A stretch of DNA of 64,000 nt from Zootoca vivipara (GCF_963506605.1 NC_083281.1:24614001-24678000), one strand, 5' to 3'; counted from the stretch's first letter, positions 11,648-51,835 are shown. The notes: generated from the letters alone by a model not told the origin. Made by a program: numbers and translations.

Positions 11648-12712
11648 TCAGTGCTCAGAGGCTTTTGCAAAAACATTCTCCGCATCTTCCTCGACATCTT
11701 GCAGAAAGCATTGCAGCATGAAGTAGATGGTTCTGAAAGAATCAGCTCCACTAACTAAATTGCCCAACACAGGTATGAACTCAACAATCTGTTCTAGCAC
11801 TGTCTGTGCTTTCCACACCTCTGACCTGGCCAAGAGATCAAGTACAAATTCTTCGCTGATCTCATTAGCCAGTGGAGACTTCTTAATAACTGATTTCAGC
11901 TCACTTAGAGGTTTACCAACCCGGTTTGCAAGCCTCCTCAGGGACTCTTCATCCAACCCAAAAGCCATGCAGAGCTTTTTGAGTGTTGTCAACAAGAAGG
12001 AAACATGGAAAGATAATAGGAGAGTTAACCGATTCACAGAGCCAAAATACAAAGCCACAAGGGCCTGCTTCCAAATAAGGTTCCTCATCTCAATTTTCTT
12101 CTTCTTCAGGATATCTCTTGAGAATGTTGGCATTGAGAGAAGGAAGGCGTGTCTTTTGAGATGATCTAGTTCATTCTGCAAGGTTTCTTGCAGAATGGGG
12201 AAATCATACATGCTCAAATCCCAATTTGATATCAGAAAAACCTTTGGAGAAGCCTCTCCCAGTTTTCTCAGTTTATCGCAACAGTCTTGCCTTAAGTCCT
12301 TAAGTGTCTCCATTTCATTGAAGGTGGGTCTCCTTCTTTCAGCAGCCATGCTAAGATTAATTTTAGGGTGCACATAGTAAAACTTCTTTTTCATTTTCTG
12401 AATCTCACGTGCCAGCTGGGTGTCACTCTCTGTAAAGCGTTCTGAAGCAATGATAAAGAAATCGTATTTGCTAAAATCTACCTTCTCCAGATATTCATCT
12501 GCTCTGAATTCATCTGTTCCAATTCCTGGTAGATCCCATAGTGTCACCTTGGGAAACTTCGGGTGCTGATATTTTTTCGCAATCATGGTTGTCTGTTTCA
12601 GCCCTACCCTAGCTGAGCCCTCTTCAAAATCTGTCATACCCCGCAAGGCATTGACAAGAGAAGACTTGCCAGCACCTGTACGCCCTGTGATGGCAATGTC
12701 AAGTGTGGCATT
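11648..12712 (-). CDS. IRG (IRGC-like) G-domain plus C-terminal helical domain; 3' part of the terminal exon of the tandem IRG gene
   Basis: G1 GRTGAGKS, G3 WDLPG, YDFFII, altered G4 HPKIN, FLISNW, LKRHAFLLS, FGLDEESL; reads in frame with 13559-13694 once the hAT and one TSD are removed. Confidence 0.85.
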   Translation of the reverse strand, partial: NATLDIAITGRTGAGKSSLVNALRGMTDFEEGSARVGLKQTTMIAKKYQHPKFPKVTLWDLPGIGTDEFRADEYLEKVDFSKYDFFIIASERFTESDTQLAREIQKMKKKFYYVHPKINLSMAAERRRPTFNEMETLKDLRQDCCDKLRKLGEASPKVFLISNWDLSMYDFPILQETLQNELDHLKRHAFLLSMPTFSRDILKKKKIEMRNLIWKQALVALYFGSVNRLTLLLSFHVSFLLTTLKKLCMAFGLDEESLRRLANRVGKPLSELKSVIKKSPLANEISEEFVLDLLARSEVWKAQTVLEQIVEFIPVLGNLVSGADSFRTIYFMLQCFLQDVEEDAENVFAKASEH

Positions 12713-12720
12713 GCCTAGCA

Positions 12721-13558
12721 CAGGGGTCTGCAACCTTTAAGACAAAAAGAGCCACTTGGACCCGTTTCTGAAGGAAAAAAAATAAACTGGGAGCCGCAAA
12801 ACAGGGACGTAATTAGAAATCAGAGGGCCCCATAGCAAAATTTGCTATGCCCAATAATCAATGCCCCAAAATGCCATAGAAAATTAATCAGGGCCCCAGT
12901 GTACCATAAATCATAATCAGTGCCTGATGTAAATAATAATTAATAATGAGGGCCCAATGTCATCCTCGTCATTATAAAAATAACTTTGAGTTTGGGCTGC
13001 CTTGATTACTGGGAATGGGCAAAACTCTGACTCCCTTATTAGGACACCTGTATGGTTTCATGTGTGTTGCTCCCATCAAGTGAACTTATAAAATTTCCTC
13101 ATATTGAATGAACCCATTGATTAATACATCTACCTCAATCTCCTGACCAGGCCGGCAGGAGGCCACAGGCAGGCCGCAGGCAGGAGCAGCAGCAGCAAAC
13201 AGGCGCTCCGAGCCCGCAAGCCTTTTCTGTTGCTGGGCGGGAAGAAGCGCGCCCGTTTTAAAAAATAAATAACTCCGCCCCCACCCCCATGAGCCTATTG
13301 GCTGCAGAAATGCGGCGGGGAGGGGCTGATGCAGGGAGGGGGCCGACCACGCTCCCCGGGCTGCTAACGTCACCTTGCGTCCTTTTTGCACAGCGGCGGT
13401 GGGCACCGTGCGAGTGTCTGGCGGGCGTGGCGGGCGCCGCCACATGGCTCAGGCAGCGCATGGCTCGGACGCCTCCTCCCCTCGTATCCGCTCCGGAGCC
13501 GCAGCAAAGGTGTAAAAGAGCCACATGCGGCTCCGGAGCCGCAGGTTGCAGACACCTG
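12721..13558. mobile_element. 838-bp non-autonomous hAT (Charlie-like) element inserted in the IRG coding exon
   Basis: TIR CAGGGGTCTGCAACCT / AGGTTGCAGACACCTG; perfect 8-bp TSD GCCTAGCA at 12713-12720 and 13559-13566. Confidence 0.95.
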
Positions 13559-13694
13559 GCCTAGCAAATCTAACTCTTGCCGAATCTGAGCTACCACATC
13601 TGGGAGATTTCTTTGTCTTAAAACAGCCTTCATATTTTCCAAGTCAGCATTAAAGATGGCAAGCCACGTGGCTCTTCTTGATGTATCACTTGAT
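13559..13694 (-). CDS. N-terminal helical segment of the terminal IRG exon, upstream of the hAT insertion
   Basis: Acceptor TTTTTTTCTTTCCTAG|A; encodes ...ADLENMKAVLRQRNLPDVVAQIRQELDLLG, which aligns with DLAEVKAALEQKKLEDVSAEAQQQSNLLK of the 42532 paralog. Confidence 0.8.
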
Positions 13695-13861
13695 CTAGGA
13701 AAGAAAAAAAGCATTTTATTTTTTTTAAAATACTACTTATTTTTCTTTGACAACCTAGATACAGCTGCATGGAGGTGAATTGATCTTTGTAAGAGTAGTC
13801 CTGATGGAGGTTATTGCATGCCAAGGCACCTGAACCACAAAGTTCCCAGGAGAACAATAAG

Positions 13862-15630
13862 TCACACTGACACAGAATATTTTGGTTTATGGGTTCAAAT
13901 AGGCCACAACTTTATTGGTTACAGATGTGAGCGCAGGGCCATCTTATGCCTATCCAGCGCCGTGGTTCAAGAAGCCCTCCAGCGCCCCGTCCCCCGTTCC
14001 CATAGTTGCTGGGGCTGGAGGAGCGGGCCACTCCCCCCCTCTTTATTGGGGTGTGTGCGTGTGCAGAATAGAGCGGACCCAGGAGTCCCGGCTCAGCTCC
14101 CCACACCCTCCGCCTCCTCTCTGCTCCAGCCCCTCCCCTCTGGCTTGGCTTTGCTGCCACGCCGCACTGCGCGGCACGGTGGGTGCTGCCGAGGGTGCGC
14201 GCAATGAACGGGGGAGGAGGAGGAGGGCAGGGAGGGATGGAGAGAGTGCAGGGCCTGCCTCTCCTTCCTCTTCCTCTGCGTGGCACCAGGGCCGCTGGCC
14301 GGGACCAGCGCTCGCCTCTCCATCCTGGCAGGGCTGGAGGGCGACTCCTCCAGCAGAGAAGAGGTGGAGGCTCTGGGCACGGCACTGCTTCGGCATGGCA
14401 AGTGAAGGCACCACGTCCAGCCTCCACCTCTTCCTGCCTCGGTGGCCATGGCAGGCAGAGGCTCCGGGCGCGGCGCTGCTTCGGTGTGGCGGCCAAGGGC
14501 GCTGCGTCCAGCCTCCGCCTCTTTCCAGGCGCCAGGGAAGCCCTGCCCAGCAATGGCAAGAAAGTGACAGTTGCTGAGGGGAGGGAGGGGCAGGGTCCCA
14601 AGCACAGTGCCAGCGTGTGCGCAGTCGGTGCAAAGACCGACGAGGCATGCGCAGATCGGGTCGCCTCCAAGCTCTCCTCCCCTTTTCTTTGCTTCCCGCA
14701 ACCTTTTTCTCTGCACGCCTGCCAGCCATAGGGTTGACAGGGCACAGCTGGCAGGCGTGCAGGAGGCCGTGCAGCTCCCCCACTTGCTGGGGCACCCCTC
14801 AGCGCCCAGCGCCCTGGTGCAATGCCCCAGTAAAATAAATGGGAAGGACGGCTCTGTGTGAGCAGTTTGGCTCAGGCATTGGGGTGAAGCCAGACTATAT
14901 CTTGACTCCCGCCTGTCTGCAGGGAATCCACAGAAAGGTAAACCACTGATAGGGGGTGCCCTATAACTTACATTAGACAGTGGCACCCCGAGGGGTCCCT
15001 GTAGGGGCTGTGACACGGCCCTATCCCATGTCCAGGCTTCAGACAGGATTCACACCCCGGGTCCCTTTAACAGGATACCCTTACTGAGGAGGGGCAAGTG
15101 AGGCAACAACCTCCCCTCCATCCAAACAAAGGCTTACCCAATGCCTAACCTCACAAAAGTTGTGACGATTGCTACTAGGTGGGCGAAAACCAAATGGCCG
15201 GTGCCAATTTGCCAAGTGGGGAAAAAATCCTACCTGGCCCCAAGAACTTGGCGACCGACAACTGACATAACAAGGTCATATCTGAGCAAAGCATGAAAAG
15301 TGGGTGGGTGGGTAGGGTGATCTGATGAAGAGGCAAGGAAGAGAGAGTTGGCCGGCCAGCCGTGCCGAGTTTAAATGACCCATGGCCACACCTACCTTGG
15401 CCTCAGATTGGCAGATGACTGCACTGGCTGTGTAGCGGGGGGGGGGGAGGCAGCATACCTACCCCTACGCCGGAAAACTGTTGAGGCTCGGCTGACTGGC
15501 TGCAATGCCATACACCAGATAAAAGGTGAACGGACCTGCCAGCTAAACAAGACCCATATGGAGACTCTGGGCTTCCCACCTTCGCCTCTGAAGCCCAAAG
15601 GTTGAAGGGGAAAACTGAGGATCAATACAG
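13862..15630 (-). mobile_element. Probable LTR- or DIRS-like non-coding retroelement remnant hosting the 13934 hAT
   Basis: Minus-strand AATAAAGTTGTGGCC terminal-like segment and non-genic character; ends and family not established. Confidence 0.3.
13934..14856. mobile_element. Non-autonomous GC-rich hAT element
   Basis: Ends CAGGGCCATCTT / AGGACGGCTCTG; TSD TGTGAGCG / TGTGAGCA; subterminal homology to 17290-17426. Confidence 0.8.
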
Positions 15631-16169
15631 TGATCGGGATGTGTCTGGAGGCTATTGGTGTGTCCAGGTGAGATATTAATGAGATAGGACACTTCAGGCT
15701 GCCTTAGAACCATTGTGTGTTCCTCATTTATATGGGAAGGGCATATAGCCCAGTGGCAGGGCATCTGCTTTAAATGCAGGAGATCACAGGTTCAATCCCT
15801 GACATTTCCAGTTTGGGCTGGGAACGTGCCCTTTCTGAAACCCTAGAGAGCTGCTGCCAGTCCATGTAGCCAGTACAAGGTCTAGCTCAATAAATGGTCT
15901 GACTCAACATAAGACAGCTAAGTTCCTTACTAAGGTTCTGCACAGGGTGTCATTACTCCAAAGAGGTATGTATCGTTTGAGTCAGGAAGGACCCTGACAA
16001 AGAGAAGTGATTCTGCAACTGCAACTTCTGCAACTGAAACCTCCAGACACAGTTTGCTTTGTGCTCTTATCCCCTGCCGGCATAAATGGCAGGAGCCTTG
16101 CCAGAGGCTTGGAAAGAATAGAGGAGCATCAGATGATGACATAAATGGCCTAAGCTGAACCCAACATAC

Positions 16170-16850
16170 CTATCAAGTAACTGGTTTAGTACTAAGGCAC
16201 GCCTCTTGAGATCAGTAAATTCTTCTTGCAGGGTCCTTTGCAGGAGGGGGAAATCATACATGCTCAAATCCCAATTTGAGATAAGAAAGACCCTTGGAGG
16301 AGACTCCCCGGCCTTTGCCAGATTTTCACAGTAGTATTTCCTTATTTCCTTAAGGGTTCTGTCCTCCGTGAAGTGTGGGTTTCTTTTTTCGTCAGCTATA
16401 CTGACATCCACTTTGGTGCGCACATAGAGAAACCTCTTCTTCCTTTTCCTAATTTCACGAGCCAACATGGCATCGTGCTCGGTGAAGCCTATTTCGCCAA
16501 CAATGATGAAGAAATCATACTTTTTGAAATCCATGTCTTTTACGTATTTCTCTGCTGCAAACTCCTGTGTTCCGATTGCTGGCAGATCCCAGAGAGTTAC
16601 GTCGGGGTCGCTGGGGCACAGGTACCCTTTGAGTTCCCTAGTACCTTGTATCATATCAACCACGGCGGCACCCACCTCATTGTCTGCCATATTGCACAGG
16701 GCATTGACCAGGGATGATTTGCCGACACCTGGCCCCCCAGTGATGGCAACGTCAAGGCTACGTCTGCCTGGTGGGTGTTTTCTTTGAGCTGATGTGTCTG
16801 ATTGGGAGCTCTTAGCACCCATAGTTGCTCCTCCGGGACATTCATCAGGT
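16170..16850 (-). CDS. IRG G-domain-only cassette exon B (681 nt, phase 2-2)
   Basis: Acceptor TTCTGTTCTTACTTAG|A, donor AG|GTATGT; G1 GGPGVGKS, G3 WDLPA, G4 TKVD, FLISNW; internal MGAKSS; no C-terminal helical domain. Confidence 0.85.
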
Positions 16851-17116
16851 CTAAGTAAGAACAGAAATACCGCAATGGTTAACTCCTTTTTACATAAAGC
16901 TCCTGTTTAAAAAAGCTGCTTTGTAGGCCCAGTCCAGATCACTCACATTAAAGTCCTAAATAAACAAACATATGAAAGACTGGCTCCTTTCCTAAAGACC
17001 GCCCCCCAAATATCTGCAGTTCAAAAGTGCCACAGCAGTGGCCACACATGGGTAGGGAAGGGAAGGCATTGATCCAACAAGGACACACCCACTGCCACCC
17101 CATTATAAGGGAAAGG

Positions 17117-17426
17117 CAGGGCCGTCTTTAGCAGATGTGGCGCCGGGGTGCAAATATATACCCAGCCATCCGGCGGGCACTGCCAGCCATCGGGGGGGGG
17201 TTGCAACTCTCCCCCATGCCGCTGCGGGAGAGCGATCCTCACAGAGGCTTGAGAGGGAAGCTGCACATCCGCCAGGCTTATGGTTGGCGGGGCACAGCTG
17301 GTGGGCATGCAGGGAAAGGGGAGGCCGCCGGCAAAGCTGCACAGCTCCCCCACTTGATGGGGCACCCCTGAGAGGCCGGCGCCCTGGTGCAGCGCACCAC
17401 TAAGCCCTATGGGAAAGACAGCTCTG
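17117..17426. mobile_element. 310-bp hAT MITE
   Basis: Ends CAGGGCCGTCTT / AAGACAGCTCTG; perfect 8-bp TSD GGGAAAGG at 17109-17116 and 17427-17434. Confidence 0.9.
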
Positions 17427-17952
17427 GGGAAAGGGGTGGGCACAGCTTAGTGCTACAAGCAGCAAATGTTGCTGAATTACAGTTCCCATCAGCCATGGCC
17501 AATGGGCAGGGAAGATGGGAGTTGTAGTTCAGTGATATCTGGAGGGCCAAACGTTCTTTACACCTAACATACAGTATCAGATTCAGGGGAATTGAAATGG
17601 ATAGCCCACTTCATAGAGGCTTGATTCATGCAACGCAGGGCTTATCAGTTTAGTTATCAGGTAACCCCATTGCGTCCTTCCCACCTCACTGTTAAGGTCT
17701 GTGTGCAAGAGAGCACACAGGGGTGGGGTATAAATAACATCATCATCATCATCATTATTGCTTGATGCCAGGAGCTGGAGTCGGGTATGGTCAACTAAAA
17801 GAGGAAAGTGAGGAGAGATATGGTCTCTACATCCTTATATATGGCTACAGCCACAATAACACAGAAAAAAGAAACATTAAACATGTTTGCTTTCATATTG
17901 AGTTGAAGATATGTAATTGAATAAAGTTTGGCTTTAGCTGAAACCAACATAC

Positions 17953-18620
17953 TTATTGTGGATCTTCCTTCCTGCGTCCTGGGGTGGTAATAAGGCATGC
18001 CTCTTGAGATCAATACATTTGTCTCGCAGGGTCCTCTGCAGGAGGGGGAAATCGTACATGCTCGAATCCCACCTTGAGATGAGAAAAACCCTTGGAGGTG
18101 ACTCCCCGGCCTTTGTCAAACGTTCACAGCAATCTTTCCTTATTTGTGCAAGGGTTTTCTCCTCATTGAAGCTTGGTTTCCTGCTTTCAGCATATATAAT
18201 AACATCCACTTTGGTGCACACATAGAAAAAACCCTTGTTCATTTTCTGAATTTCGCGGGCCAGCATGATGACATCATCAGTGAATCTTCTTTCGCCAACA
18301 ATGATGAAGAAATCATACTTTTTAAAATCCATACCCTTTATGTATCTCTCTGCCGGAAACAGAGGTGGTTGAATCCCTGGTAGATCCCAAAGGGTTACAT
18401 CTGGATATTGGGGGTATAAGTACCCTGTTGGTTCCATAGTACGTTTTATCACATCGACCATAGCTGCCCCAGCATCATCGTCTGCCATATTCCGCAGGGC
18501 ATTGACCAGGGATGATTTGCCGACACCTGAGTCCCCTACAATGGCGATATCAAGGGTATGTTTTCCAGATGGCTCATTCATTTGAGCTAATGTGTCTTGT
18601 TTGCAGCTCTTACAAGCCAT
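17953..18620 (-). CDS. IRG G-domain-only cassette exon A (first coding exon, starts MACKSC)
   Basis: Acceptor TTCTTATTTAG| at 18648, Kozak GCCATGG at 18620, donor AA|GTATGT at 17952; G1 GDSGVGKS, G3 WDLPG, G4 TKVD, FLISRW. Confidence 0.85.
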
Positions 18621-19061
18621 GGCTGCTCTTCTGTGAGATTTATCACACCTAAATAAGAACAGAAATATTGCAGCAGTTAACACCTTCTGCATCTAAGTCC
18701 TCTTTTAAAACAGCTGGATCGATTGCCAGTTCATTTAGAGGCCCAGTTCAAACTACTCACATTAGTGTTTAACTCCATTGATCATTCCAAGGAAACCATA
18801 TTCTGGGTAAGCACTGGAACCCCTGGAATCTCTCACCGAACAGAAATTGGGGTGCAGGCAACATTGTAGTTATTAAAACTTCTTAAATAAATAGCTTTAA
18901 CAAATGCTCTTGATATTCCTGTACAGCTTCATCTACATCTCAGTTTTCCTGCCTAAACCCCCTGAAATGGCTGCAATGCTTTGATGAGAAGTTTTCAAAC
19001 TGCATAACTTGGACTTCCTGTCCTGGTGAGGGTTTCTCCTGGAGAGAGCAGCTCTTATATA

Positions 19062-22110: not shown

Positions 22111-22619
22111 TATGAGAGACTTGAGTCCAGGGGAAAAGAAAGTCCTGCTAGTTCCAGCGGATGTTTGGAAATATTTTTAGTAAACAGGGAAGAGGGACAG
22201 AGAAAGATGGACAGCAACTATGTGGTGTGAGAGCTTATCCAAAGAGCGTCTCTCTCCACTGTGTCAACCCAAAGGAAAGGAAAAGAGGCAGGCACCAAGA
22301 GGAGGAGGAGGAGGGCAGCTTCCTAGCAGCTAAAGGAGGGATATGTCAAATTAACACGCAGCATCGTTTGAGAGGGAGACTCTGGTTGGTTTCAGAGCAG
22401 TTACTTAAAGTTTTTATACTAGCACTAGCTCAATAGTGATGGCATGTTATTTATTCCCTTTGTAGCAGGGAAGAAGGGCAGCCTTCTCCAACATTAATAA
22501 CAGTAATAATAAACAATTCTGGCTGCCCCGCCCCACCCGCCTAGCAAAGAGCTCAGAGTCAATCAAGCTCAAAAAGAAACGGAAATCATCATAACCCCAA
22601 GAGAAAAGTTCAGCTCCTA

Positions 22620-22975
22620 ACCTGCTGCCAGCCCGATTTTTTTACAGTAAACCTCAGTCCACTCTTCGGAGGTTTCCGCTTCCAGGTTTCTTAACACTTT
22701 TCTGTTTTCTCCTTCCAACTCTCTTCCTTTCTCTCTTCTTTTCCTTCTACCTCCTGTTCGTCGCACTACTAAAAGCAAAAACGAAAGCGAAGTTGCGAGC
22801 GAAGACGATGTAAGATTGCAGGAGAGTTTGAAACTTTCCCTCCCCCTCCCACGAGACTGCTGATGATCCCCTATTTCCCGATTGCAGCAAATAGCAAAAG
22901 CAGCATTCCTTGCTAGGGGGAGCACGGAGCAGCTGCGCTAGATAGACGAGATTCTGCTTTTCCCGGGAAGGTCCC
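22620..22975 (-). promoter_or_regulatory. IRG promoter / first-exon module P1 (drives the tandem gene)
   Basis: kB GGGACCTTCC (22975-22966) overlapping TTCCCGGGAA; IRF-like AAAAGCAAAAACGAAAGCGAA at 22771-22791; donor CAG|GTTAGG at 22621; no TATA at the homologous position. Confidence 0.65.
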
Positions 22976-24272
22976 AAAGGATCACTTGTGAAACTTGAAG
23001 CGTCAGAGGTGGTTAGTCCTTCACCTCTGTTGTTGTTGCCTCTGTGGCAGTCTCAGCAGCTCCCGAGTTGTCTGCAAGCCCACACAATCCAGATATTATT
23101 CCTTGACGGCTTCCTTGTTGTCGACTTTTGCATTGTTACATTGATAGGCCGGGGAAAGTGGAAGCGCTCTAAAGCTGCGGAGAATTTGGGCGTCTTAGAG
23201 GAAATAGTTTAATTTTTTGAAAAATTTTGATATTCTGCAGGGTGCTGAGCGGCTTTAGAGCCTGCACGAGATGCTGGCTTTGCAGACCGGGCAGGAAGGC
23301 AGGAAAGCAAACTCTCCCCAGAGTGTTCCTAGACAGCAAAGCCATTGTCCCACCCACCATCCTCAACCTGAGGGGGATACCGGTATAATGCAAGTGATCA
23401 TGGCACTGCTACGCTCAAGGGTTTCTACAGCCATAAGCAGAGAGGCTCGCCTTTCATTCCCCCAGTTTGTCCTCCTGCTTTCTGCAGCCTGGGGAGCTTA
23501 GAGCTCTTCTGCGTCCCTTGCAGGCCAGACAGGCAGGAAGCAGCTGGATCTGCAAAGCCAGCTGAGAAGCTGCTGCAGCAGGATCTTTTCCTATCCAGCC
23601 CATAGTGCCAGTAGTGACAATTTTAATCTGAACTTTTACACACAGTTCTAGTTACAGGTAGGTAGCCGTGTTGGTCTGGCATAGTTGAAACAAAATTTAA
23701 AAATTCCTTCCAGTAGCACCTTAGAGTTTGTCATTGGTATGAGCGTTCGTGTGCATGGTATCTGACGAAGTGTGCATGGTATCTGACGAACTGTGCCAGG
23801 ATGCGCCTATCACTATGGGACTTTCGGACTCTGAGATACAATAGCCATATCTAAAGGGCTGCCATATGGAGGGCGGTGCAAGCTTGTTTTCTCCTGTTGC
23901 AGAGGGTCGGACTTAAACAAACAGCTTCAAGCTACAAGGAAAGAGATTCTGACTAAACAGGAGGAAGAACTTTCTGACAGCGAAAGCTGTTTGACAGGGG
24001 AACGGACTCCCTCTGGAGTATTAGTATCAATAATATAATTTTTAAAATGGGTGTGGAAGATGAATGCAGAAGAGGTCAATTCTACATGTACAGGAATGGA
24101 AGCAATGAAATAAATCTGTTGAGTCAGTGGTGCTTTTATTTATCAGTTATGTAATTTGTTTAAAGTCTTTATATCATATCATCATATTTCGCCTGCTAGC
24201 GTTTGCTCTCTGTCATGACCCAGCACAGTCCAATAAATGATTTACAAGGAGGACCTACAGCAACCCGTTTTA

Positions 24273-26183: not shown

Positions 26184-26307
26184 TTGTCTGCACCTAAGCC
26201 ACGTGGCTTAAGTGCAGACAACTCAGGTGCTGCTGGGACTGGCACAGAGGCAACAACAGCAGAGGTAAAGGATTGCCCACATAGGATGCTTCCACATGTG
26301 ATATTTT

Positions 26308-26593
26308 GGGACTTCCCAGAAAAGGCAGCATCCCCGCTATTCGAACGGGCTGCTTGGAGCTCCCTCGGGCAAGGAATGCGGCTGCGGCTATTTGTTGCGA
26401 ATGCGATCTTATCTCATCCTCGCTGGTTATCTTCGTTTTCGTGTTTGCTTTTAGTTGTGTGGTGATCCGGAGGGAGAGGGTATAAGAGGGAGACAGAGGG
26501 AGAGAGCAGGACGGAGAAAAGCGTGAGGAACCTCGAAGCAAAACCTCTGATAAGAGGACTGAGCTTGACTGCAAAAAATCGGTCCGGTAGCAG
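26308..26593 (+). promoter_or_regulatory. IRG promoter / first-exon module P2 (likely for the gene at 30292)
   Basis: kB GGGACTTCCC (26308-26317) overlapping GAS TTCCCAGAA (26313-26321); ISRE-like 26432-26452; TATAAG at 26481; donor CAG|GTAAGG at 26594. Confidence 0.7.
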
Positions 26594-28030
26594 GTAAGGA
26601 GTTGAACTTTTCTCCTGGGTCTAGAATGATTTCCGTTTCTTTTTGAGCTTATTTGCGTTAAAGGAGACTCTGAGCTCCTTGCTTGGTGCAGGCGGCAGAA
26701 CGATTACATATTGTTTTTTTTTTACCTTTTACTTTTTAAAATTGTGATTTTTTTTACCTTTAACCTTATTATATTTATTATATTAATTATAGTATAGCTA
26801 TTGTGATGCTACGTATATCATATTACTGTATATCTAGTGCTTTTCCCCCCTTAAAAATGTTTAGGGGTACTCTCATTTTGACTCAAGAAAATCACCATTT
26901 TATCATTCAAATCGGGAAATATAAATAGAGTAAATGGAGAGAAGTTTAAAGAACATGCATTTCCTCCTATCACACAGCTGACAGCTCACAGTAACTTCAA
27001 CATTGGCATGAGGTTGTGTGCACTAACATCTTCCTGATTCCTTTCTGAGAAAGGAAAGGAAGTCGCCATCGGAGCTGGTAACAACAAAATGTTTGTGGTA
27101 TGTGTACCCCTGCGTCGTCCCCCCGGAAAAATCACTGGTCATATCATATTATAAACATCATCATCATTATTACAATGATGTTCTAGAAGGCTGCCCTTTT
27201 CCCCCTGGCAAATGGAATAAATAACATGCCATCACCATGGAGCAGAGCTGCTGCTACCAATTTATACTGTAGTTCAAATCGGGGAAAATAAATACAGTAA
27301 ATGGAAAAAAAGTAGCAAAGGTTCACAAAAAATGTTTTGGGGTAAACTCGGGAAACCCCCTCAGCGCCCTCCCCCCCCCCAACGATCTGCTCCCCATTCT
27401 TCCCTAGGTCACTCTGCTGAACATCTGGATCGCCACGGGTTTGTCTTGAAAGGTATGCGTGGGGGTGGGGTGCCTGGACTGGAGGGGTGGGTGAGAGCAG
27501 CTGTGGGCCGTGGCCAAAGTTTAGCCGGAGTTGAGTTCAGATCGGGAGCAATTCAGATTGCAGGGAAAGAGAAGTTTTCCCCAAAGCGGCTGGCTCCGCA
27601 AGATCAAGATATCCCCTTCGCCCACCCCGCCTCCCGACCGGTGGATCGATGGGAATCTGCCACTGAGGTCGCGGGAGGACAATCAGAGTCCCGCCTGCAA
27701 AAGGACGGGATACAGCGGGAGGTGTTGGAAGGAAAATGTGGACCGGTGGGCACACACTTGACTCGGAAAGCCAGCCTCCCATCCACCTGGATCCTGGGGA
27801 AAGCGAAGATCCGGCCCTGACACCTTAGTGGACTTTTCAAAGTCTTTCTGTTTGTGCTTTTTCAAAGCAGGGGCAAATGTCGTTTCAGTAGGTGGCCCTT
27901 GGCTTAAAATGAAGTTTGGAAACTGTTGCTCTGGGTGCCTTGAAGGTACTTGAGAGGTAGGAACGGGCTCAGGATAGGACGTTCAAAAACAAGAGCGCAG
28001 GACAACAGACGAGTTGCTATGAGTCATAGC

Positions 28031-31530: not shown

Positions 31531-34318
31531 AGGAGTTCTTCGGATCTCATGTAGTGGACCATGATGGGTGCTTAGCTTCTAAATGTATGGAATGGCACCA
31601 AATTGAACAGAGCTCTGTCCTTGCAAGCTCAGGATTAAGCTCACTTAATTCTCTCTTTTTTAATGGTGCCTACAATTATGGGGAAAGGGCTTTGCTTGTT
31701 GCATAGTTTCAACACGGTATCTTTCCAATTCCAGCAAAGGAATCCTGGGAACTAAATGGGGATTTCTTAAAGAATGCCAGCACCCTAACAAAACTACAAT
31801 TCCCAGGGTCCTTTGTTGGAAAGCTGTGGCAGTTAAACCTAGAATGAAGCTGGATGAAACTTGTCTTGTAGATGTGAGCCATATGCATTTGACGGGAGGC
31901 CTTTTGGGATTGGCTTGCTTCCTTTAGTGAAAAACTGGATGATGAATGTTTAATTTTGTTTTAATGTTACTACTCTAATAACTTTATAACTAAAGCCAAG
32001 ATTGTGCTGTTTTAGACCCGGTGGAGCTCCTGGGTAAACGTTCAGGGCTTAACTTAACAAAGAACTGGAATACAAATCAGTTCCCTTTTTACTAGTGGTT
32101 CAAGCCACAGATTGTGACAACCTGAATCTTTAGGCCTGTCTTGCTTTCCTTTCTTTTTTCCTTTTGGAATAATAAAATGTGTCTAACCTAAAGCATCTAG
32201 AGTGTACAAGTTCCTTGGTTTGAAGCAGAAGATTTAAAACAAGTGGCATCTTCTCACTCATAAGTAACTCTGAGCCAGGTCCCATTGTCCTCTAGGAAAA
32301 ACTTTTATCTGGCCAGCTCCAATCCCATTAGCTATATTGGAACTCCAGGTTAATTTCTAGATTTAAGCAACAGCCAATACTAATGAGGAAAAAATTAAAG
32401 GCTGGGAGAAATTTTAATGGGATGGGGCACACATTTTACACAAGCCTTCTGGGAGCTGTAGGTAAGCCCAATTACAGTTTGTTCAGATTTTAAAAAAATG
32501 CATTCTTTGCCAAATGAAATACTGAGCTTGGCTAATAACCCAAGGAAGTTTAACCAATTTGTTAAGCAAATCCTCTCTACTGATGACCTAGCGATACAAA
32601 CTTTAGACCACGATTCTGAGTACACCTGTCGCTTAACAAGTAAGACTAGTAAACTATGGCTTTAGTTTTATAAACTTAATTCATACAAGACATGTTGGAG
32701 CTACCTATTATGAGCCAAAATCTAAATTTCCATGTTTCTTATGAATCCTGTTCTAATCAAACATGGTAAGCAGGTTTTTTGGGCATAAGACGACTTATGA
32801 AAACTAAGTACAGAAACCATACGAGAATTCCAGGGGTGTCAGATCTCAATTGCTGTGATGTAGCTTTCCAGACAGCAGAATGTTTCATGTTTCCTGGGGC
32901 ACTGCTCTGCCATCTAACCTTTCTCTGAGGCCAAAGCATGATGTGGTTATGTCTACGAAAGTTATCTCCAACCACATCTATGAAGCATGACAGGTATCAT
33001 GTCACAGACGAAAAGCTCTCAGGGGATTTGGCTGTAGTGCATGTACTTCACTTCTGCCACAAAGTCAGTGACAGTCAGCAGAAGAGGCTGTCATGACGAC
33101 GGTAGGAAGCGATGGAGGGAAAAGCAGTGAAGTGTCAGCGTCATTCCTGACAGCGGATTTGGCACTTCAAAAGGCATTTGCTGAGAAACATTCCCTGGAG
33201 GAAATATCCTGGCAAAGCAGCACCCAGCACAGGTTGAGTCTTCTGATACCCCTTCTTCAGAGGGATGCCATTACGGATATTATTCTTTCAATAATTATAT
33301 ATAATAGGCCAGGCTATGCTCAACATATAGGCATCTATGCGTATCCACACTAGAGATACTGTTAACAGAGGAGGCAGTCTGGAGTTTTTTGGGGGAAAGC
33401 CTCACACAACGTGAAACAGCACAAACAATTTATTAAACAAGAATGTCATATTCCCCAAAGGGAAGTTACTCTTAACTCACATTGCGGCAGGAACAAGAAA
33501 GCTAGGCTTGGATCGAGGAAAGGGGCAGACTTGAGGGGGAGATGCGTTGGGTTCCACATCCCTCAAAATGGAAGGTTATGAGCAACACACTCGACTACAG
33601 GGAAGTACTATCTCAACATATACAAAGCAACAACTCTCGCTCCCCACTGACCTTTGCCCTGACCCACCACTGCAACTGTGGATAATTTTTTTTTTCTGCC
33701 CAGAGGGTAGGAGGAGGTTACAGGTGGTTCTGTCATAACTCCTACACTGGCTTCTGCTTTCTGGAGGGAGTCGCAGCCCATGAGAAGACATGCATAGCTC
33801 TCTCGTCTTTGCATGTAGGTGGGAACGGAGCAAGACCCATGCTGGGCGGCAGGCAGTACGGTGGCCCAGTAGGGACACCACACCAATCCTGTGTTTTTGC
33901 TCCTTGCAACTTGCATAGCATCACCGAAGGAGGGCTAGGGCCCACCCCCAACAGCTCCCTCTCTGGGAGACACATGTCGCTTTGTGCCTCTGGACGCCGG
34001 CTCAGATGCCCTGGCCCACCCAGCTGGGGGGGGGGAGCCTGGCTGCTGTTCGGCAGCTACCAATGCGAGGATGTCACACTCAGGCCAGCTGCACTGCTGC
34101 ACTACTTGCCTTGATCTAATCCAGTGTGCTCACTGCGCCCACACATGAAAGAGTTGTCATATGGCATATCGGAGGCCATAATTTCACAAAATACACATAT
34201 ATGCGTACACTTTCATACCTTGCAACTTCATTACACCTAGAGTTCTGCAATGTAAGATTGCAGGAGAGTTTGAAACTTTCCCTCCACCTCCCGTGAGACT
34301 GATGATAATCCTCTACAG

Positions 34319-35795: not shown

Positions 35796-36005
35796 TATTT
35801 CCCGATTGCAGCAAATAGCAAAAGCAGCATTCCTCGCTAGGGGGAGCACGGAGCAGCTGCTTGATAGACGAGATTCTGCCTTTCCTGGGAAGGTCCCAAA
35901 GGATCACTTGTGAAACTTGAAGTGTCAGAGGTGGCTAATCCTTCACCTCTGTTGTTGTTGCCTCTGTGGCAGTCTCAGCAGCTCCCGAGTTGTCTGCAAG
36001 CCCAC
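35796..36005 (-). promoter_or_regulatory. Orphan upstream half of IRG promoter module (P3)
   Basis: kB GGGACCTTCC (35897-35888) and TTCCTGGGAA retained; ISRE and exon-1 part absent. Confidence 0.55.
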
Positions 36006-36997
36006 ACAATCCAAATACTGTATTGATAGGCTGCGTAAAGTGGAAGCGCTCTAAAGCTGTGGGGGTTTGGAGCGTCTTAGAGGAAATAGTATCCCATTTT
36101 TAAGAAAAGTTCTAACATTCTGCAGGGTGCCGAGCGGCTTCAGACAGAGCCTGCACGAAAAGCTAGCTTTGCAGACCGGGCAGGCAGGCAGGACATCAAA
36201 CTCTCCCCAGAGTGTTCTTAGATGGACAGCAAAGCCTTTGTCTCATCCGCCTTCCTCAACCTGAGAAAGATATGGTGCAAGGGGACATGGCGCAGCTACG
36301 CTCAAGGGCTTCTACAGCCATATGCAGAAAAGCTCACTTTTCATTCCCCCAGTTTGTGCTCCAGCTTCCTGCAGCCTGGGGAGCTCGAGTTCTGCCGCAC
36401 CCCTTGCAGACCGGGCAGGCAGAAAGGCAGCAGCTGGATCTGCGACTGCAGCAGGATTTTTTCCTATCGTGCCCTCAGTGCCAGCAGTGGCAATTTAAAT
36501 CTGATACAATACAATACAGTGTACAGTATTGCGATAAGTGTTCAGAAACGGCTCGCGCTAATACTGTAAAACTCTCTGTGGTGTGGCAGAATGGGACTTT
36601 CGGACTCTGAGATACAGTATGATAGCCATCTTCAGATATCTAAAGGCTTGCTATATGGAAGGCGGTGCAAGCTTGTTTTCTCCTGCTCCAGAGGGTCGGA
36701 CCTGAACAAACAGCTTCAAGTTACACGAAAGGAGATTCCGACTAAACACGAGAAAGAACTTTCTGACAGCAAGAGCTCTTTGACAGTCAGACGGACTCCC
36801 TCTGGAGTATTACCGGTAGTATTAACAACATAACTTTTAAAATTGGTGTGGAAGATGAATGCAGAAGAGGACAATTCTAGATACACAGGAATGGAAACGA
36901 TGAAATAAATCTGTTGAGTCAGTGGTGCTTTTATGTATAAATTACGTAATCTGTTTAAAGTCTGTATTATATCAGCATCTTTCTCCTGAGTTTTGAT

Positions 36998-39655: not shown

Positions 39656-39940
39656 GTTTTATCCAACTTTATTCATGCTCAGAGAACACCAATGAATGCA
39701 CCTGATTAACTAGAAGGGTTTTTTAAAAAATATCTAGGTCTGTAGGAAAAAAAATGTCTACGGTCATTTGCAAATATTCTACACTGCAGTAGTAGGAAGG
39801 CTGGGCTCTGAGTAGTCCTATTTCACCAATGCCACGTGGCTTAAGTGCAGACAATTCAGGTGCTGCTGAGACTGACACAGAGGCAGCAACAGCAGAGGTA
39901 AAGGATTACCCACGTGGGATGCTTCCACAGGTGATATTTT

Positions 39941-40219
39941 GGGACTTGCCAGAAAAGGCAGCATCCCCGCTGGCAAACGGGCTGCTTGGAGCTCCTTATG
40001 GCCAGGAATGCGGCTTTAGCTATTTATTGCGATCTTATTTCATCCTCGCTCGTTACCTTCACTTTCGTTTTTGCTTTTAGTAGTATGACTATCAGGAGGG
40101 AGAGGGTATAAAAGGGAGACAGGGGGGGGGGAGCAGGGAGGAGAAAAGCGCGAAAACCTCGAAGCAAAACCTCTGAGGAGAGGACTCAGCTTGACTGCAA
40201 AAAATCGGTCCAGCAGCAG
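39941..40219 (+). promoter_or_regulatory. IRG promoter / first-exon module P4 (likely for the gene at 42532)
   Basis: Mutated kB/GAS GGGACTTGCCAGAA; strong IRF site TTCACTTTCGTTTT at 40058; TATAAAA at 40107; donor CAG|GTAGGG at 40220. Confidence 0.7.
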
Positions 40220-41237
40220 GTAGGGAGTTGAACTTTTCCCATGATTTCCTGTTTGTTTGTTTGTTTGTTTGAGCTTGTTTGCTTTAAAGGAGACTCTGAG
40301 CTCCTTGCTTGGGGGGTAGCAGAAACAATGTTTTGTTGTTGTTGTTGTTGTTTGTTGTCTACCTTTTACCTTTTTATTGTTATTTTTTACCTTTTTGTTG
40401 TTATTATATTAACCATTACATTATACCTATTGTGATATCATATATCATATCATATTATAAACAATAATATTATTATTAACAATGATGTCGGAGAAGGCTG
40501 CCCTTCTTCCCCGCAGCAAAGGGAATAAATAGCATGCCACCCTCAGGGAGCAGGCAGAGCAGGTGCTACTATAAGAGTCCCCCCCCACAAGCTTAATAAA
40601 AGACGTTTATTAGCATTGCAATGCAGTTTATGATCCCACCCCCTTTGTCAGAGCGGGGAACGGGGTGCAGAACAGAAGAATACAGCAACTTCTATTCTCC
40701 AAACAATGCCCTGAGTCTGAAGAGGCAGAGACCATCTGGGCTGCCTCTTAGTGCAGAAGCAAAGCATAAGAGTTCTAAGTAACTGCCCTGAAGCCAATGG
40801 GGCCGGTCTCCCTTTAGTGTATTAATTCAATATATCCCTCTGCAGACCTCCCCCCCCCCCAAGTTGATGGATTTATTACTCCTGCAAGAAAGCAGCAGGA
40901 ACACCGCTGCATCCCAGCACTTGCTGGCATGTAAAAATGATATCTGTGCGCTACCTCTGATTAGAAAAACTGCATGGCAAGGGTTCGAGCTAGGGCAGGG
41001 CAGAAGATGCTAGAGGTTCTCTTGGTTCAGGGTAGGTGCTGCCTGAGGAACCTGGATAGCTCAGTGGGTTAGACCATGCTGCTGATAATGCCAAGGTTGC
41101 AGATCAGCTGCATATTCCTGCATTGCAGGGGGTTGGACTGGATGACCCTCAGGGACCCTTCCAACGCTAGAGTTCTATAATTCTAAGACTTTTCCAAGTC
41201 GCCCTGTCCAGGCTTTCCATATCCTTCCATGAATGTG

Positions 41238-50586: not shown

Positions 50587-50759
50587 TTGTAGAGTCGGAA
50601 AGGACCTCAAGGGTCATCTATTTCAACCCCTTGAAATCAGTGCCATGTGGGGCTTAAGTGCAGAAAACTCGGGAGCTGCTGAGACTGACACAGAGGCAAC
50701 TACCGCAGAGGTAAAGGATTAATCATCTCTGATGCTTCAAGTTTCACAAGTGATCCTTT

Positions 50760-51047
50760 GGGACCTTCCCATGAAAGGGCAGCGTCCCCGCTGTCAATCA
50801 GGCTGCTTGGAGCTCCCTCTAGCGGGGAATGAGGCTCCCGCTCTTCATTGCATACTGTATCGCCTTCGCGCGTACTTTCGCTTTCTTGTTTGCTTTTTGT
50901 AGTGCGACGACCAGGAGGGAGAGGGAATAAAAGCGAGAGAGAGAAAGAGAGTTGGACGAAGAAAAGGGTCAGAGACCAGCAAGCAAAGCCTCCGAAGAGG
51001 GAACTGAGCTTTACTGCATAAAAATCGGACAGGCAGCAGGAAACGAG
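50760..51047 (+). promoter_or_regulatory. IRG promoter / first-exon module P5 (likely for the gene at 58254)
   Basis: kB GGGACCTTCC at 50760 overlapping TTCCCATGAA; ISRE ACTTTCGCTTTC at 50874-50885; AATAAAA at the TATA position; donor GAG|GTGAGC at 51048. Confidence 0.65.
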
Positions 51048-51835
51048 GTGAGCATTTCTCCTGGGGCTCTGCTGATTTCCGTGGGTTTTTTGGGTTTTTT
51101 CTGAGCATGTTTGAGTTAAAGGAGACTCTGAGCTCATTTCTAGACAGGGGGCGGCAGAATCGTTTATTTTCACTCTTATGAATAATGATGTTGAGAAGGC
51201 TGCCCTTCTTCCCCGCTGCAAAGGGAGTAAATAACATGAAAGCTCCAAGGAGCAAGCAGAGCTGGTGCTACCATATAAGAGTTGTAAGTACTGTAACTGC
51301 TCTGAAATCAACGCGGGTCTCCCTTTCCAGCGGTGACGCGTGTTCATTCGACATCCGCTTCTGCAGCTGCTACGGTACGAGGCTGCCCTCCTGCTCCTCT
51401 CGCCTCCTGCCTCTTTACTTTTTGGGGGTTTGACAGAGGGGAGGGGGAAGCTATTTGGAAGTAGGCAGAGCTTAATCTAAGTGATCTGTCGCTCCTGGCA
51501 GAACCGTTCAGATTGCGCCCCCTAGCCACGGACGAATGAGCTCTTCTTTCCGTCTCTCCTCCACCCCACCCCCCACAAGCATTCAATTCCTCACATACTT
51601 CACCTTGTAATGAATTCTTTCACAGAAAATACAGTATTTAATTTATTATTTCTTAATAAAAGGTTTCAGCAGAGAAAATGACATTTTGATGTGAGTTGAC
51701 AGGTGTTTTTTTAAAAATGTAATTCAGTTGTAAAACAATACACAGATATGCCTAAATGGAACATACAAACAATATCTTACTGAATTGTTCCACAATGATA
51801 ACTTTCTGGTCTCAGAGCCAGAGGTGTCGTATACA

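What the first reader, a model, noticed from the sequence alone, without database searches (positions are those of the whole stretch)
11648..18648. Three 'separate' IRG ORFs form one spliced triple-GTPase IRG (G-G-full IRG, ~849 aa)
Seen: ORFs A and B stop resembling IRG right after the G-domain (LKRHAL / LKRRAL). Each then has the same donor, GTATGTTGG, in phase 2 (AA|GT at 17952; AG|GT at 16169). The next acceptors (16850, 13694) are also phase 2 and read open into the next unit (AA|A CCT GAT...ATG GGT; AG|A TCA AGT...). Exon lengths 668+681+1201 = 2550 nt give 849 aa plus stop. The codon where the last unit's paralogs start is ACG (GCCACG), so it looks like an internal exon. Only one promoter module (22.6-23.0 kb) lies upstream of all three. 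Known: rodent tandem IRGB proteins exist, but as fusions of roughly whole IRG units. Inference: bare G-domains stacked in front of one complete IRG may be an undescribed architecture, acting as a pre-assembled oligomer, regulator or pathogen-effector decoy.
Basis: partly seen in the sequence, partly recalled or inferred. Interest (0 to 1): 0.92.

Follow-up and report, generated by a model that had tools for sequence, protein, structure and literature searches.

The report
Lizard tandem triple-GTPase IRG gene, already annotated
The three interferon-type GTPase reading frames belong to one spliced gene that RefSeq already lists for this lizard (Zootoca vivipara LOC118086237), but here a transposon sits in its last coding exon, so the 849-residue protein cannot be made from this copy.

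Summary
Three IIGP/IRG reading frames lie on the minus strand. Two are G-domain-only duplicates (A, B) and one is a full unit (C). Phase-2 donors at 17953 and 16170 and acceptors at 16850 and 13694 keep one frame.

One point is not stated in the finding. The "1201-nt" third exon exists only after removing an 838-bp hAT-like element plus one 8-bp target-site copy. As it stands, the frame stops inside that element.

The splice model is not new. RefSeq proteins of Zootoca vivipara LOC118086237 (918 aa, later 557 aa) use exactly these junctions. Podarcis raffonei has the intact co-linear orthologue (852 and 841 aa).

Other evidence points the same way:
- B's ATG is lost in two Podarcis species.
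- C has no start codon in any lacertid.
- Only one promoter module lies upstream of all three units.

Sampled RNA reads were too thin to show the junctions.

G-only units in front of a full IRG are predicted widely, in squamates, fishes and sharks. Zebrafish irgg-irgq1 is a published precedent. The reading is correct, the product length is overstated, and novelty is low.

The parts
22550..23100 (-). Promoter and 5' untranslated exon module. It contains ISRE-like and GAS-like strings and a candidate donor, gcagcag|gttagg, near 22621.
   Evidence: Sequence read. Paralogous copies lie upstream of each other IRG gene in the window (26213-26650, 39846-40281, 50659-51090), and none lies between A and B or between B and C. 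Use of the donor is inferred, not shown.
17953..18648 (-). Exon A. Acceptor ttatttag|G at 18648, ATG at 18620. It encodes a bare G domain (222 codons plus 2 nt) and ends at the phase-2 donor AA|GTATGT.
   Evidence: It matches Irga6 residues 68-259 and IRGB10 residues 66-258 only. It equals residues 1-222 of RefSeq P0026 and P0273.
16851..17952 (-). Intron between A and B, 1102 nt, with interspersed repeats.
   Evidence: No sense RNA depth except on a repeat at 17450-17649.
16170..16850 (-). Exon B, 681 nt (227 codons), phase 2 at both ends, so it can act as a cassette. It encodes the linker PDECPGGAT, then a second bare G domain, and ends at the donor AG|GTATGT.
   Evidence: It equals residues 224-449 of P0026. 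RNA depth stops sharply at 16850 in run X21.
13695..16169 (-). Intron between B and C, 2475 nt, GC-rich repeats.
13559..13694 (-). First part of exon C: the N-terminal helical segment of the full IRG unit. The paralogous start codon here is ACG. It ends with the first target-site copy, TGCTAGGC.
   Evidence: It equals residues 451 onward of P0026.
12721..13558 (.). An 838-bp hAT-like non-autonomous element inserted in the coding exon. It has 15-bp terminal inverted repeats with one mismatch and an 8-bp target-site duplication. It carries an in-frame stop (ORF end 13370) and candidate splice sites: donors with exon ends at 13556 and 13374, acceptors with exon starts at 12734 and 12727.
   Evidence: Both RefSeq models contain residues derived from the element.
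11648..12720 (-). Second part of exon C: the second target-site copy, the G domain and the C-terminal helical domain of the full IRG unit, and the stop codon at 11648-11650.
   Evidence: profile 33-374 of 375. It equals residues 558-918 of P0273. It is 87% identical to Podarcis orthologues.

Best explanation
This is one gene, Zootoca vivipara LOC118086237, a tandem immunity-related GTPase.

Gene structure. A single interferon-type promoter module at about 22.6-23.1 kb drives a 5' untranslated exon. That exon splices to exon A (bare G domain). Exon A splices by a phase-2 donor to exon B, and exon B splices to exon C. Exon B is a duplicate of exon A whose former 5' UTR now codes a 9-residue linker. 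Exon C is a full IRG unit that has lost its own start codon.

Isoforms. Exon B is 227 codons and has phase 2 at both ends. Both A-B-C and A-C therefore stay in frame.

Age. The G-only exon in front of a full IRG is an old squamate design. The A/B duplication predates the Zootoca-Podarcis split. Podarcis raffonei keeps the intact 852-aa form.

This copy. An 838-bp hAT-like element sits just before the P-loop of unit C. The message therefore has two possible fates. It may read into the element and stop, giving a 557-aa protein of two G domains plus a stub. Or it may use weak splice sites inside the element to rejoin unit C.

Function (inferred). The bare G domains dock on the nucleotide face of the full unit's G domain, as IRG dimers do. 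This would give a built-in regulatory or decoy partner.

What is shown: the anatomy, the frames, identity with the RefSeq models, the orthologues and the promoter distribution. What is inferred: actual splicing in Zootoca, the fate of the interrupted exon, and the function.
For: Exons, frames and splice sites.

RefSeq P0026 (557 aa) and P0273 (918 aa) are encoded piece by piece, without any change, using junctions 17953>16850 and 16170>13694.

Orthologous three-unit models have the same junctions (HNK|PDECP and LDR|SSD): P. raffonei at 852 and 841 aa, P. lilfordi at 824 aa, and P. muralis at 753 aa.

The position of B's Met is Val in P. raffonei and Thr in P. muralis, yet B stays open and conserved there. 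The position of C's Met is Thr, Ser or Lys in all lacertids.

The promoter module occurs once per IRG gene, and none lies before B or C. No AATAAA or ATTAAA lies between A's stop and B.

dN/dS between A and B is 0.49.

Tree. The A clade and the B clade each hold Zootoca plus Podarcis (support 100). Bare-G units of non-gecko squamates form one clade (99) and those of geckos another (100). Both are apart from the full units.

RNA. In run X21, sense-oriented reads cover A at 2-3x and B at about 1x. Depth ends at 16850. My bin arithmetic puts the A reads as ending at about 17953.

Docking of B on C. Score 0.77 against a best control of 0.00. That mark was reached by 51 of 78 solved complexes and 2 of 108 mismatched pairs. 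The runs agree in at least 97% of contacts and the partner's pLDDT is at least 81. The interface covers the P-loop, switch I and the G3 region of both domains.
Against: No junction read was listed for 17953>16850 or 16170>13694. Listing needs 3 reads and depth was 1-3x in one of three RNA runs, with about 6% of each run read.

Bases laid in bin 16050-16249 exceed what the exon part can hold. A Logan contig of run X2 runs 111 nt past B's donor. B's donor is therefore not always used, or X2 is DNA.

No sense reads were seen on the first 78 nt of the G-domain part of C in X21.

No transcript-derived protein in the protein collection spans the A>B junction. All the supporting proteins are gene predictions, and I could not inspect their RNA support.

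The docking result may be memory of solved IRG dimers (Irga6, IRGB10). It also used the Podarcis orthologue, not the interrupted Zootoca unit.
Confidence: 0.78

Rival explanations
1. Mostly two-unit products. The locus chiefly makes G-IRG proteins, either A-C by skipping cassette exon B, or B-C by splicing the 5' exon straight to B's acceptor and starting at B's ATG. The three-unit form would be a minor isoform or an annotation choice.
For: Exon B is 681 nt with phase 2 at both ends, so skipping it keeps the frame. Ensembl models P. muralis as A-C (625 aa) and one P. lilfordi model is B-C (605 aa). Two-unit proteins of about 620 aa are the common form across squamates. Zootoca B keeps an ATG in good context, followed by MGAKSS, a typical N-myristoylation start.
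Against: Four lacertid annotations include A-B-C models. B's ATG is lost in P. raffonei and P. muralis, so B-C cannot start there in those species. No read data decide between the isoforms.
Confidence: 0.25
2. Three separate units. A and B are independent, C-terminally truncated G-only genes or pseudogenes (like the truncated human IRGM). Each ends at its own stop a few codons past the supposed donor. C is a pseudogene that lost its start and was hit by a transposon.
For: A and B have their own ATGs, and stops 6 and 34 codons after the donor. Run X2's contig and the bin arithmetic for X21 suggest read-through of B's donor. C has no ATG and an interrupting element. No junction reads were listed.
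Against: There is no promoter module before B or C, while every other IRG gene in the window has one. There is no poly(A) signal between A and B. The frame and the 9-residue linker are conserved in Podarcis. B stays intact in species where its ATG is gone. C is 87% identical to intact Podarcis orthologues, with an open frame on either side of the element. RNA depth ends exactly at B's acceptor.
Confidence: 0.1
3. A dying gene in Zootoca. The locus is transcribed and spliced as in Podarcis, but the transposon has made it a unitary pseudogene. Its truncated G-G product would have no function.
For: The element lies 3 codons before the P-loop strand of C and brings an in-frame stop. The current RefSeq model ends in it. 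Both RefSeq models, from two annotation releases, carry element-derived residues. Expression was nil in two of three RNA runs. Zootoca-only changes occur at conserved positions: WDSS for WDLS in A, and Thr to Val in switch I of C.
Against: All coding parts are still open, so any decay is recent. Candidate in-frame splice pairs exist. The pair 13556/12727 would add six residues. The pair 13374/12734 was used in the 918-aa model. A G-G protein could still act as a regulator. Whether the insertion is fixed in the species was not tested.
Confidence: 0.25

Closest known systems
RefSeq gene LOC118086237 of Zootoca vivipara (XP_034973523.1, 918 aa; XP_060131627.1, 557 aa) and its orthologue LOC128418413 of Podarcis raffonei (XP_053254030.1, 852 aa; XP_053254031.1, 841 aa)
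   Same: It is the same locus, with the same exons and junctions. The Zootoca models are encoded letter for letter by the window.
   Different: The RefSeq names are 'uncharacterized protein', and no function or description is attached.
Mouse tandem IRGB proteins (Irgb2-b1, Irgb5-b4; Bekpen et al. 2005, PMC1297648; Lilue et al. 2013, PMC3810784; Murillo-Leon et al. 2019, PMC6420625)
   Same: Neighbouring IRG units are expressed as one in-frame tandem transcript. The downstream unit lacks its own promoter and autonomous transcripts.
   Different: The mouse proteins have two full-length units with P-loops about 400 residues apart. Here two G-only units sit about 235 residues apart in front of one full unit. 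The two origins are independent.
Zebrafish irgg-irgq1 tandem transcript (Bekpen et al. 2005, PMC1297648)
   Same: A C-terminally truncated canonical IRG unit is spliced in front of a second IRG unit whose nucleotide-binding motifs are modified. The authors proposed a regulatory role for one half. Here the full unit has G4 HPKIN instead of TKxD, and unit B has G3 DLPA.
   Different: The zebrafish downstream unit is itself truncated. The zebrafish gene has two units rather than three, and it belongs to a different lineage.
Irga6 and IRGB10 G-domain dimers (PDB 5FPH, 7C3K, 8JQY)
   Same: The predicted contact of bare unit B with unit C uses the nucleotide-binding faces of both G domains. A matches only the G-domain part of these chains.
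   Different: Those are dimers of separate full-length chains that depend on nucleotide. Here the partners would be tethered in one chain. This is predicted only.

Membership tests
IRG / IIGP GTPases (Pfam PF05049) | Significant match to the IIGP profile | tested here: met
   A scores 3.1e-59, B 7.8e-55 and C 3.8e-87, all far above the 24-bit cut-off.
IRG / IIGP GTPases (Pfam PF05049) | Canonical nucleotide-binding motifs: G1 GxxxxGKS, G3 DxxG, G4 (T/S)KxD | tested here: inconclusive
   G1 is intact in all three units. G3 is DLPG in A and C but DLPA in B. G4 is TKVD in A and B but PKIN in C. Switch I is altered in A and B. All these changes are conserved in Podarcis. Nucleotide binding was not testable.
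IRG / IIGP GTPases (Pfam PF05049) | N-terminal helices plus a C-terminal helical domain around the G domain | tested here: not met
   Only C has them (profile 33-374 plus the 13559-13694 segment). A and B cover profile 33-225 and 34-237, and Irga6 residues 68-259, only. The gene is a member through unit C. A and B are G-domain fragments of the family.
IRG / IIGP GTPases (Pfam PF05049) | Interferon-inducible promoter | not testable with these tools
   A shared promoter module with ISRE-like and GAS-like strings is present. Induction itself needs an experiment.
Tandem IRG genes (Irgb2-b1 type) | Units joined in frame in one transcript | tested here: inconclusive
   Frames, splice sites and gene models in four lacertids agree. 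No junction read was seen at 1-3x depth.
Tandem IRG genes (Irgb2-b1 type) | Downstream units lack their own promoter and start codon | tested here: met
   No promoter module lies before B or C. C has ACG at the paralogous start. B's ATG is absent in two of four lacertids.
Tandem IRG genes (Irgb2-b1 type) | Each unit is a full-length IRG | tested here: not met
   A and B are G-only. P-loop spacing is about 232 and 236 residues, against about 400 in rodent tandems.
Truncated-unit tandem (zebrafish irgg-irgq1 type) | A C-terminally truncated upstream unit spliced to a downstream unit with modified GTP-binding motifs | tested here: inconclusive
   Truncated upstream units are present. The downstream unit has a modified G4, but it is full length and otherwise canonical. 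The two are not orthologous: fish units cluster apart in the tree.

The most novel reading that the evidence does not exclude
Squamates carry an old, undescribed subclass of IRG genes, (G)n-IRG. In it a symmetric phase-2 exon encoding only a G domain can be duplicated and stacked (two, three or four P-loops) in front of one full IRG.

The bare G domains form their own lineage with a changed switch I. In non-gecko lineages the position of the catalytic Glu is Gln or Lys. They would act as tethered partners, either non-hydrolysing or decoy, that occupy the dimer face of the full unit.

In lacertids all three units carry conserved motif changes: switch I in A and B, G3 DLPA in B, and G4 PKIN in C. 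This suggests a regulatory assembly rather than a plain GTPase. The Zootoca transposon allele would be a natural truncation to G-G.
Probability: 0.35. Interest if true: 0.55.

Novelty: already known. Interest (0 to 1): 0.33.

Why it matters
In mice, tandem IRG proteins decide resistance to virulent Toxoplasma, so tandem forms in other vertebrates interest students of cell-autonomous immunity.

The useful result here is a correction. That gene is already in RefSeq, and the architecture is common in predicted proteomes of squamates, fishes and sharks. In this lizard the last exon is broken by a transposon.

Two things remain open and worth a specialist's look:
- No paper I could find describes the squamate G-only stacking exon.
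- No paper I could find describes the conserved motif changes in all three lacertid units.

Public RNA runs of this species appear to express the locus, so the splice question can be settled cheaply.

Tried and rejected
RNA check. About 6% of each raw run was read. Only X21 covered A and B, at 1-3x, and no exon junction reached the listing threshold. This is uninformative, not negative.

Element reads. Reads on the element (13250-13450) carry a 32-nt insertion relative to the window. They come from other copies of the element, so I did not use them.

Hybrid contig. I treat the X2 contig that joins A to B through a 34-nt identical stretch as an assembly switch between paralogues or a recombinant allele. 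It is not splicing.

Transcript-derived proteins. A search for proteins spanning the A>B junction found gene predictions only.

I therefore could not fetch Podarcis genomic DNA, or check intron positions and splice sites in orthologues at the DNA level.

ISRE scan. The scan with GAAANNGAAAS gave nine hits, none in the A-B or B-C spacers. Its hit at 20007 lies in a repeated 11-mer, so I did not take it for a promoter.

Literature. Searches for squamate or lizard IRG descriptions found nothing relevant.

Joined model. I used the database proteins P0273, P0026 and P0364 and the separate exons instead.

Not run. I did not predict a structure for the whole protein, because the tool reports no inter-domain geometry.
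Full report
WHAT IS THERE

On the minus strand of 11.6-18.7 kb lie three open frames that match the interferon-inducible GTPase profile PF05049:
- A, 17934-18692, matches profile positions 33-225 of 375.
- B, 16067-16822, matches 34-237.
- C, 11648-12733, matches 33-374.

A matches only the G-domain part of solved IRG structures: Irga6 residues 68-259 and IRGB10 residues 66-258. A and B are therefore bare G domains, without the N-terminal helices or the C-terminal helical domain.

A and B are duplicates, 82% identical in DNA. The homology begins about 130 nt upstream of a strong acceptor, passes through a 28-nt former 5' UTR and the ATG, and ends about 30 nt after a shared GTATGTTGG.

- Exon A ends at 17953 (caataa|GTATGT).
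- Exon B spans 16850-16170 (cttacttag|ACCTGA ... tgatag|GTATGT).
- The next acceptor is at 13694 (ctttcctag|ATCAAG).
- All junctions are phase 2 and the frames stay open.
- Exons 1 and 2 are 668 and 681 nt.

THE OMISSION

From 13694 to the stop at 11648 is 2047 nt, not 1201. An 838-bp element (12721-13558) sits three codons before the first strand of C's G domain. It has 15-bp terminal inverted repeats (CAGGTGTCTGCAACC and CAGGGGTCTGCAACC) and an 8-bp target-site duplication, TGCTAGGC. The 8-bp duplication and the repeats fit a hAT-type non-autonomous element.

The figure of 1201 nt, and so 849 aa, is obtained only by deleting the element and one target-site copy exactly. That reconstructs the allele before the insertion. 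It is not a product of this DNA. Read through, the frame stops inside the element. A separate first-stage note (s1-850940) covers the element. The finding I was given does not mention it.

THE LOCUS IS ALREADY ANNOTATED THIS WAY

The window is from Zootoca vivipara. Its own proteins share the 97,165,297-base record with RefSeq Zootoca proteins.

The 557-aa RefSeq protein XP_060131627.1 ('uncharacterized protein LOC118086237') is built as follows:
- exon A (residues 1-222);
- a split Lys codon;
- exon B (residues 224-449);
- a split Arg codon;
- the 13693-downward segment, read on into the element to its stop.

Every piece is encoded without change by the window. The older XP_034973523.1 (918 aa) is the same, but then leaves the element at AAG|GTGACG (exon end 13374) and re-enters at cttaaag|G (12734).

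ORTHOLOGUES

Several Podarcis models cover the same locus:
Isoform X2 (841 aa) uses a donor 11 codons earlier in B.
- P. lilfordi has an 824-aa model and P. muralis a 753-aa three-unit model.
- Two-unit models also exist: A-C at 625 aa in P. muralis (Ensembl) and B-C at 605 aa in P. lilfordi.

The junction residues are the same in all (HNK|PDECP(G/R)GA and LDR|(S/P)SD).

Two details argue that B and C are internal exons. The Met of B is Val in P. raffonei and Thr in P. muralis, while B stays open and conserved. The position of the paralogous Met of C is Thr, Ser or Lys in every lacertid.

B is 227 codons with phase 2 at both ends, so it can be included or skipped without breaking the frame. 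dN/dS between A and B is 0.49 (dS 0.47), which is not the signature of two dead copies.

PROMOTER AND ENDS

The module at 22550-23100 has a paralogous copy 2-7 kb upstream of each other IRG gene of the window: 26213-26650, 39846-40281 and 50659-51090, all inverted to suit the plus-strand genes. There is none between A and B or between B and C. It holds ISRE-like and GAS-like strings and a candidate donor near 22621.

No AATAAA or ATTAAA lies on the minus strand between A's stop and B's acceptor. The first after B's stop is 2 kb away. This matches the argument Bekpen et al. used for mouse Irgb1 and Irgb4.

RNA

Of three raw RNA runs of the same species label, only X21 had reads on A (2-3x) and B (about 1x). 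They were mostly in the orientation expected for a minus-strand RNA in a stranded library. X19 and X20 had none. No A>B or B>C joint was listed, but listing needs three reads and only about 6% of each run was read.

Depth gives weak hints, by my arithmetic on the bins:
- Depth falls from 1.7 to 0.01 exactly at B's acceptor.
- The bases laid in 17850-18049 fit within the exon part alone, as if reads stop at 17953.
- The bases in 16050-16249 exceed what the exon part can hold. A contig of run X2 (RNA only by guess) also runs 111 nt past B's donor, so B's donor may not always be used.

No sense reads lay on the first 78 nt of C's G-domain part. The splice question therefore rests on comparative evidence and gene models, not on reads that I saw.

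HOW COMMON THE DESIGN IS

Among the proteins fetched, 25 have three or more P-loops and 73 have two P-loops 225-275 residues apart, meaning a G-only unit before a full unit. Rodent-type tandems have P-loops about 400 residues apart.

G-G-full models occur in geckos (one Gekko kuhli model has four P-loops), in Podarcis, in a gadid fish and in sharks. Lungfish, newt and soft-coral proteins also show three IIGP stretches.

A tree of G-domain segments (quick search, SH-aLRT support) gives these groupings:
- Zootoca A with Podarcis A (100), and Zootoca B with Podarcis B (100).
- Both of these with Rhineura bare units (97).
- All non-gecko squamate bare units together (99).
- Gecko bare units together (100).
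- All of the above apart from the full units.

The G-only exon is therefore an old squamate lineage. The A/B duplication predates the Zootoca-Podarcis split. In the fish sampled, bare and full units are recent within-species copies, so the design arose more than once.

In print, Bekpen et al. 2005 (PMC1297648) describe the zebrafish truncated irgg spliced to irgq1, and propose that one half regulates the other. I found no paper on squamate IRG tandems.

HOW IT MAY WORK

The motifs are not canonical, and the changes are conserved across Zootoca and Podarcis:
- A and B have switch I AA(V/M)VD(V/M)I(K/Q)(G/R)T, where single-unit IRGs have AAKTGVxETT. The position of the Irga6 catalytic Glu is therefore Lys or Gln. 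The role of that Glu is from my knowledge of the Irga6 literature and was not tested here.
- B has G3 DLPA.
- C has G4 HPKIN in place of TKxD. In Ras-like GTPases the Asp-to-Asn change at this position shifts specificity towards xanthine nucleotides (established knowledge, not tested here).

A complex prediction used Podarcis unit B (residues 233-450) against unit C (451-852), with GTP and Mg. It scored 0.77 against a best control of 0.00. That mark was reached by 51 of 78 solved complexes and 2 of 108 mismatched pairs. The runs agreed in at least 97% of contacts and the partner's pLDDT was at least 81. The contact is between the nucleotide faces of the two G domains (P-loop, switch I, G3 region). 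Because IRG G-domain dimers have been solved, this may be memory. It shows likeness, not binding.

My reading is a tethered IRG assembly in which the bare, probably poorly hydrolysing G domains occupy the dimer face of the full unit. They would act as built-in regulators or decoys. This part is inference.

VERDICT

- Observation: real, but the third exon is interrupted.
- Interpretation as one spliced gene: well supported indirectly, and identical to existing RefSeq models.
- The 849-aa protein: not encoded by this copy.
- The claim of an undescribed architecture: not upheld at the level of public annotation, and it has a published precedent.
- Residual interest: the undescribed squamate stacking exon and the conserved motif changes.

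NOT DONE

Noticed in passing
window 12585-12640, 16560-16700, 18380-18470 and 12360-12380 (minus strand): All three units carry motif changes that are conserved in Podarcis. Switch I of A and B reads AA(V/M)VD.I(K/Q).T. B has G3 DLPA. C has G4 HPKIN instead of TKxD. Zootoca C alone has Thr to Val in switch I. This overlaps first-stage note s1-850973.
   Followed up: partly
window 12721-13558: The hAT-like element offers two in-frame ways out. The pair CAG|GTGTCT (exon end 13556) with ttgcag|ACC (exon start 12727) would add six residues. The pair AAG|GTGACG (13374) with aaag|G (12734) was used in the 918-aa RefSeq model. Neither was seen in reads. Reads on the element come from other copies, since they carry a 32-nt insertion at 13395.
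   Followed up: partly
window 22550-23100; copies at 26213-26650, 39846-40281, 50659-51090, 34250-34315 and 35796-36017: There is one conserved promoter module per IRG gene. A split same-strand copy at 34.2-36.0 kb has no obvious gene. The segment 22960-23024 resembles IRG coding DNA at 58476-58534, in line with first-stage note s1-850067.
   Followed up: partly
window 16059-16491 joined to 18290-18435: A 579-nt Logan contig of run X2 joins the 5' part of A to the 3' part of B through a 34-nt identical stretch. It carries six differences in B. It is either an assembly switch between paralogues or an A/B recombinant allele.
   Followed up: no
window 18612-18620 and 16814-16822: B starts with MGAKSS, a typical N-myristoylation start as in Irga6. 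A starts with MACKSC in Zootoca and in two Podarcis species, but with MGCKSS in the P. muralis RefSeq model and MGGKSS in Rhineura. The first unit seems to have lost the myristoylation glycine in some lacertids.
   Followed up: no
window 53816-57394 (minus strand): An uninterrupted 1192-aa copia-type gag-protease-integrase-reverse transcriptase frame lies between a promoter module (50.7-51.1 kb) and the IRG coding exon at 58254.
   Followed up: no
window 17971-18370: All X21 RNA reads on exon A differ from the window at eight positions, about 2%, while reads on B match almost perfectly. This could be a divergent allele of A or a close paralogue elsewhere.
   Followed up: no
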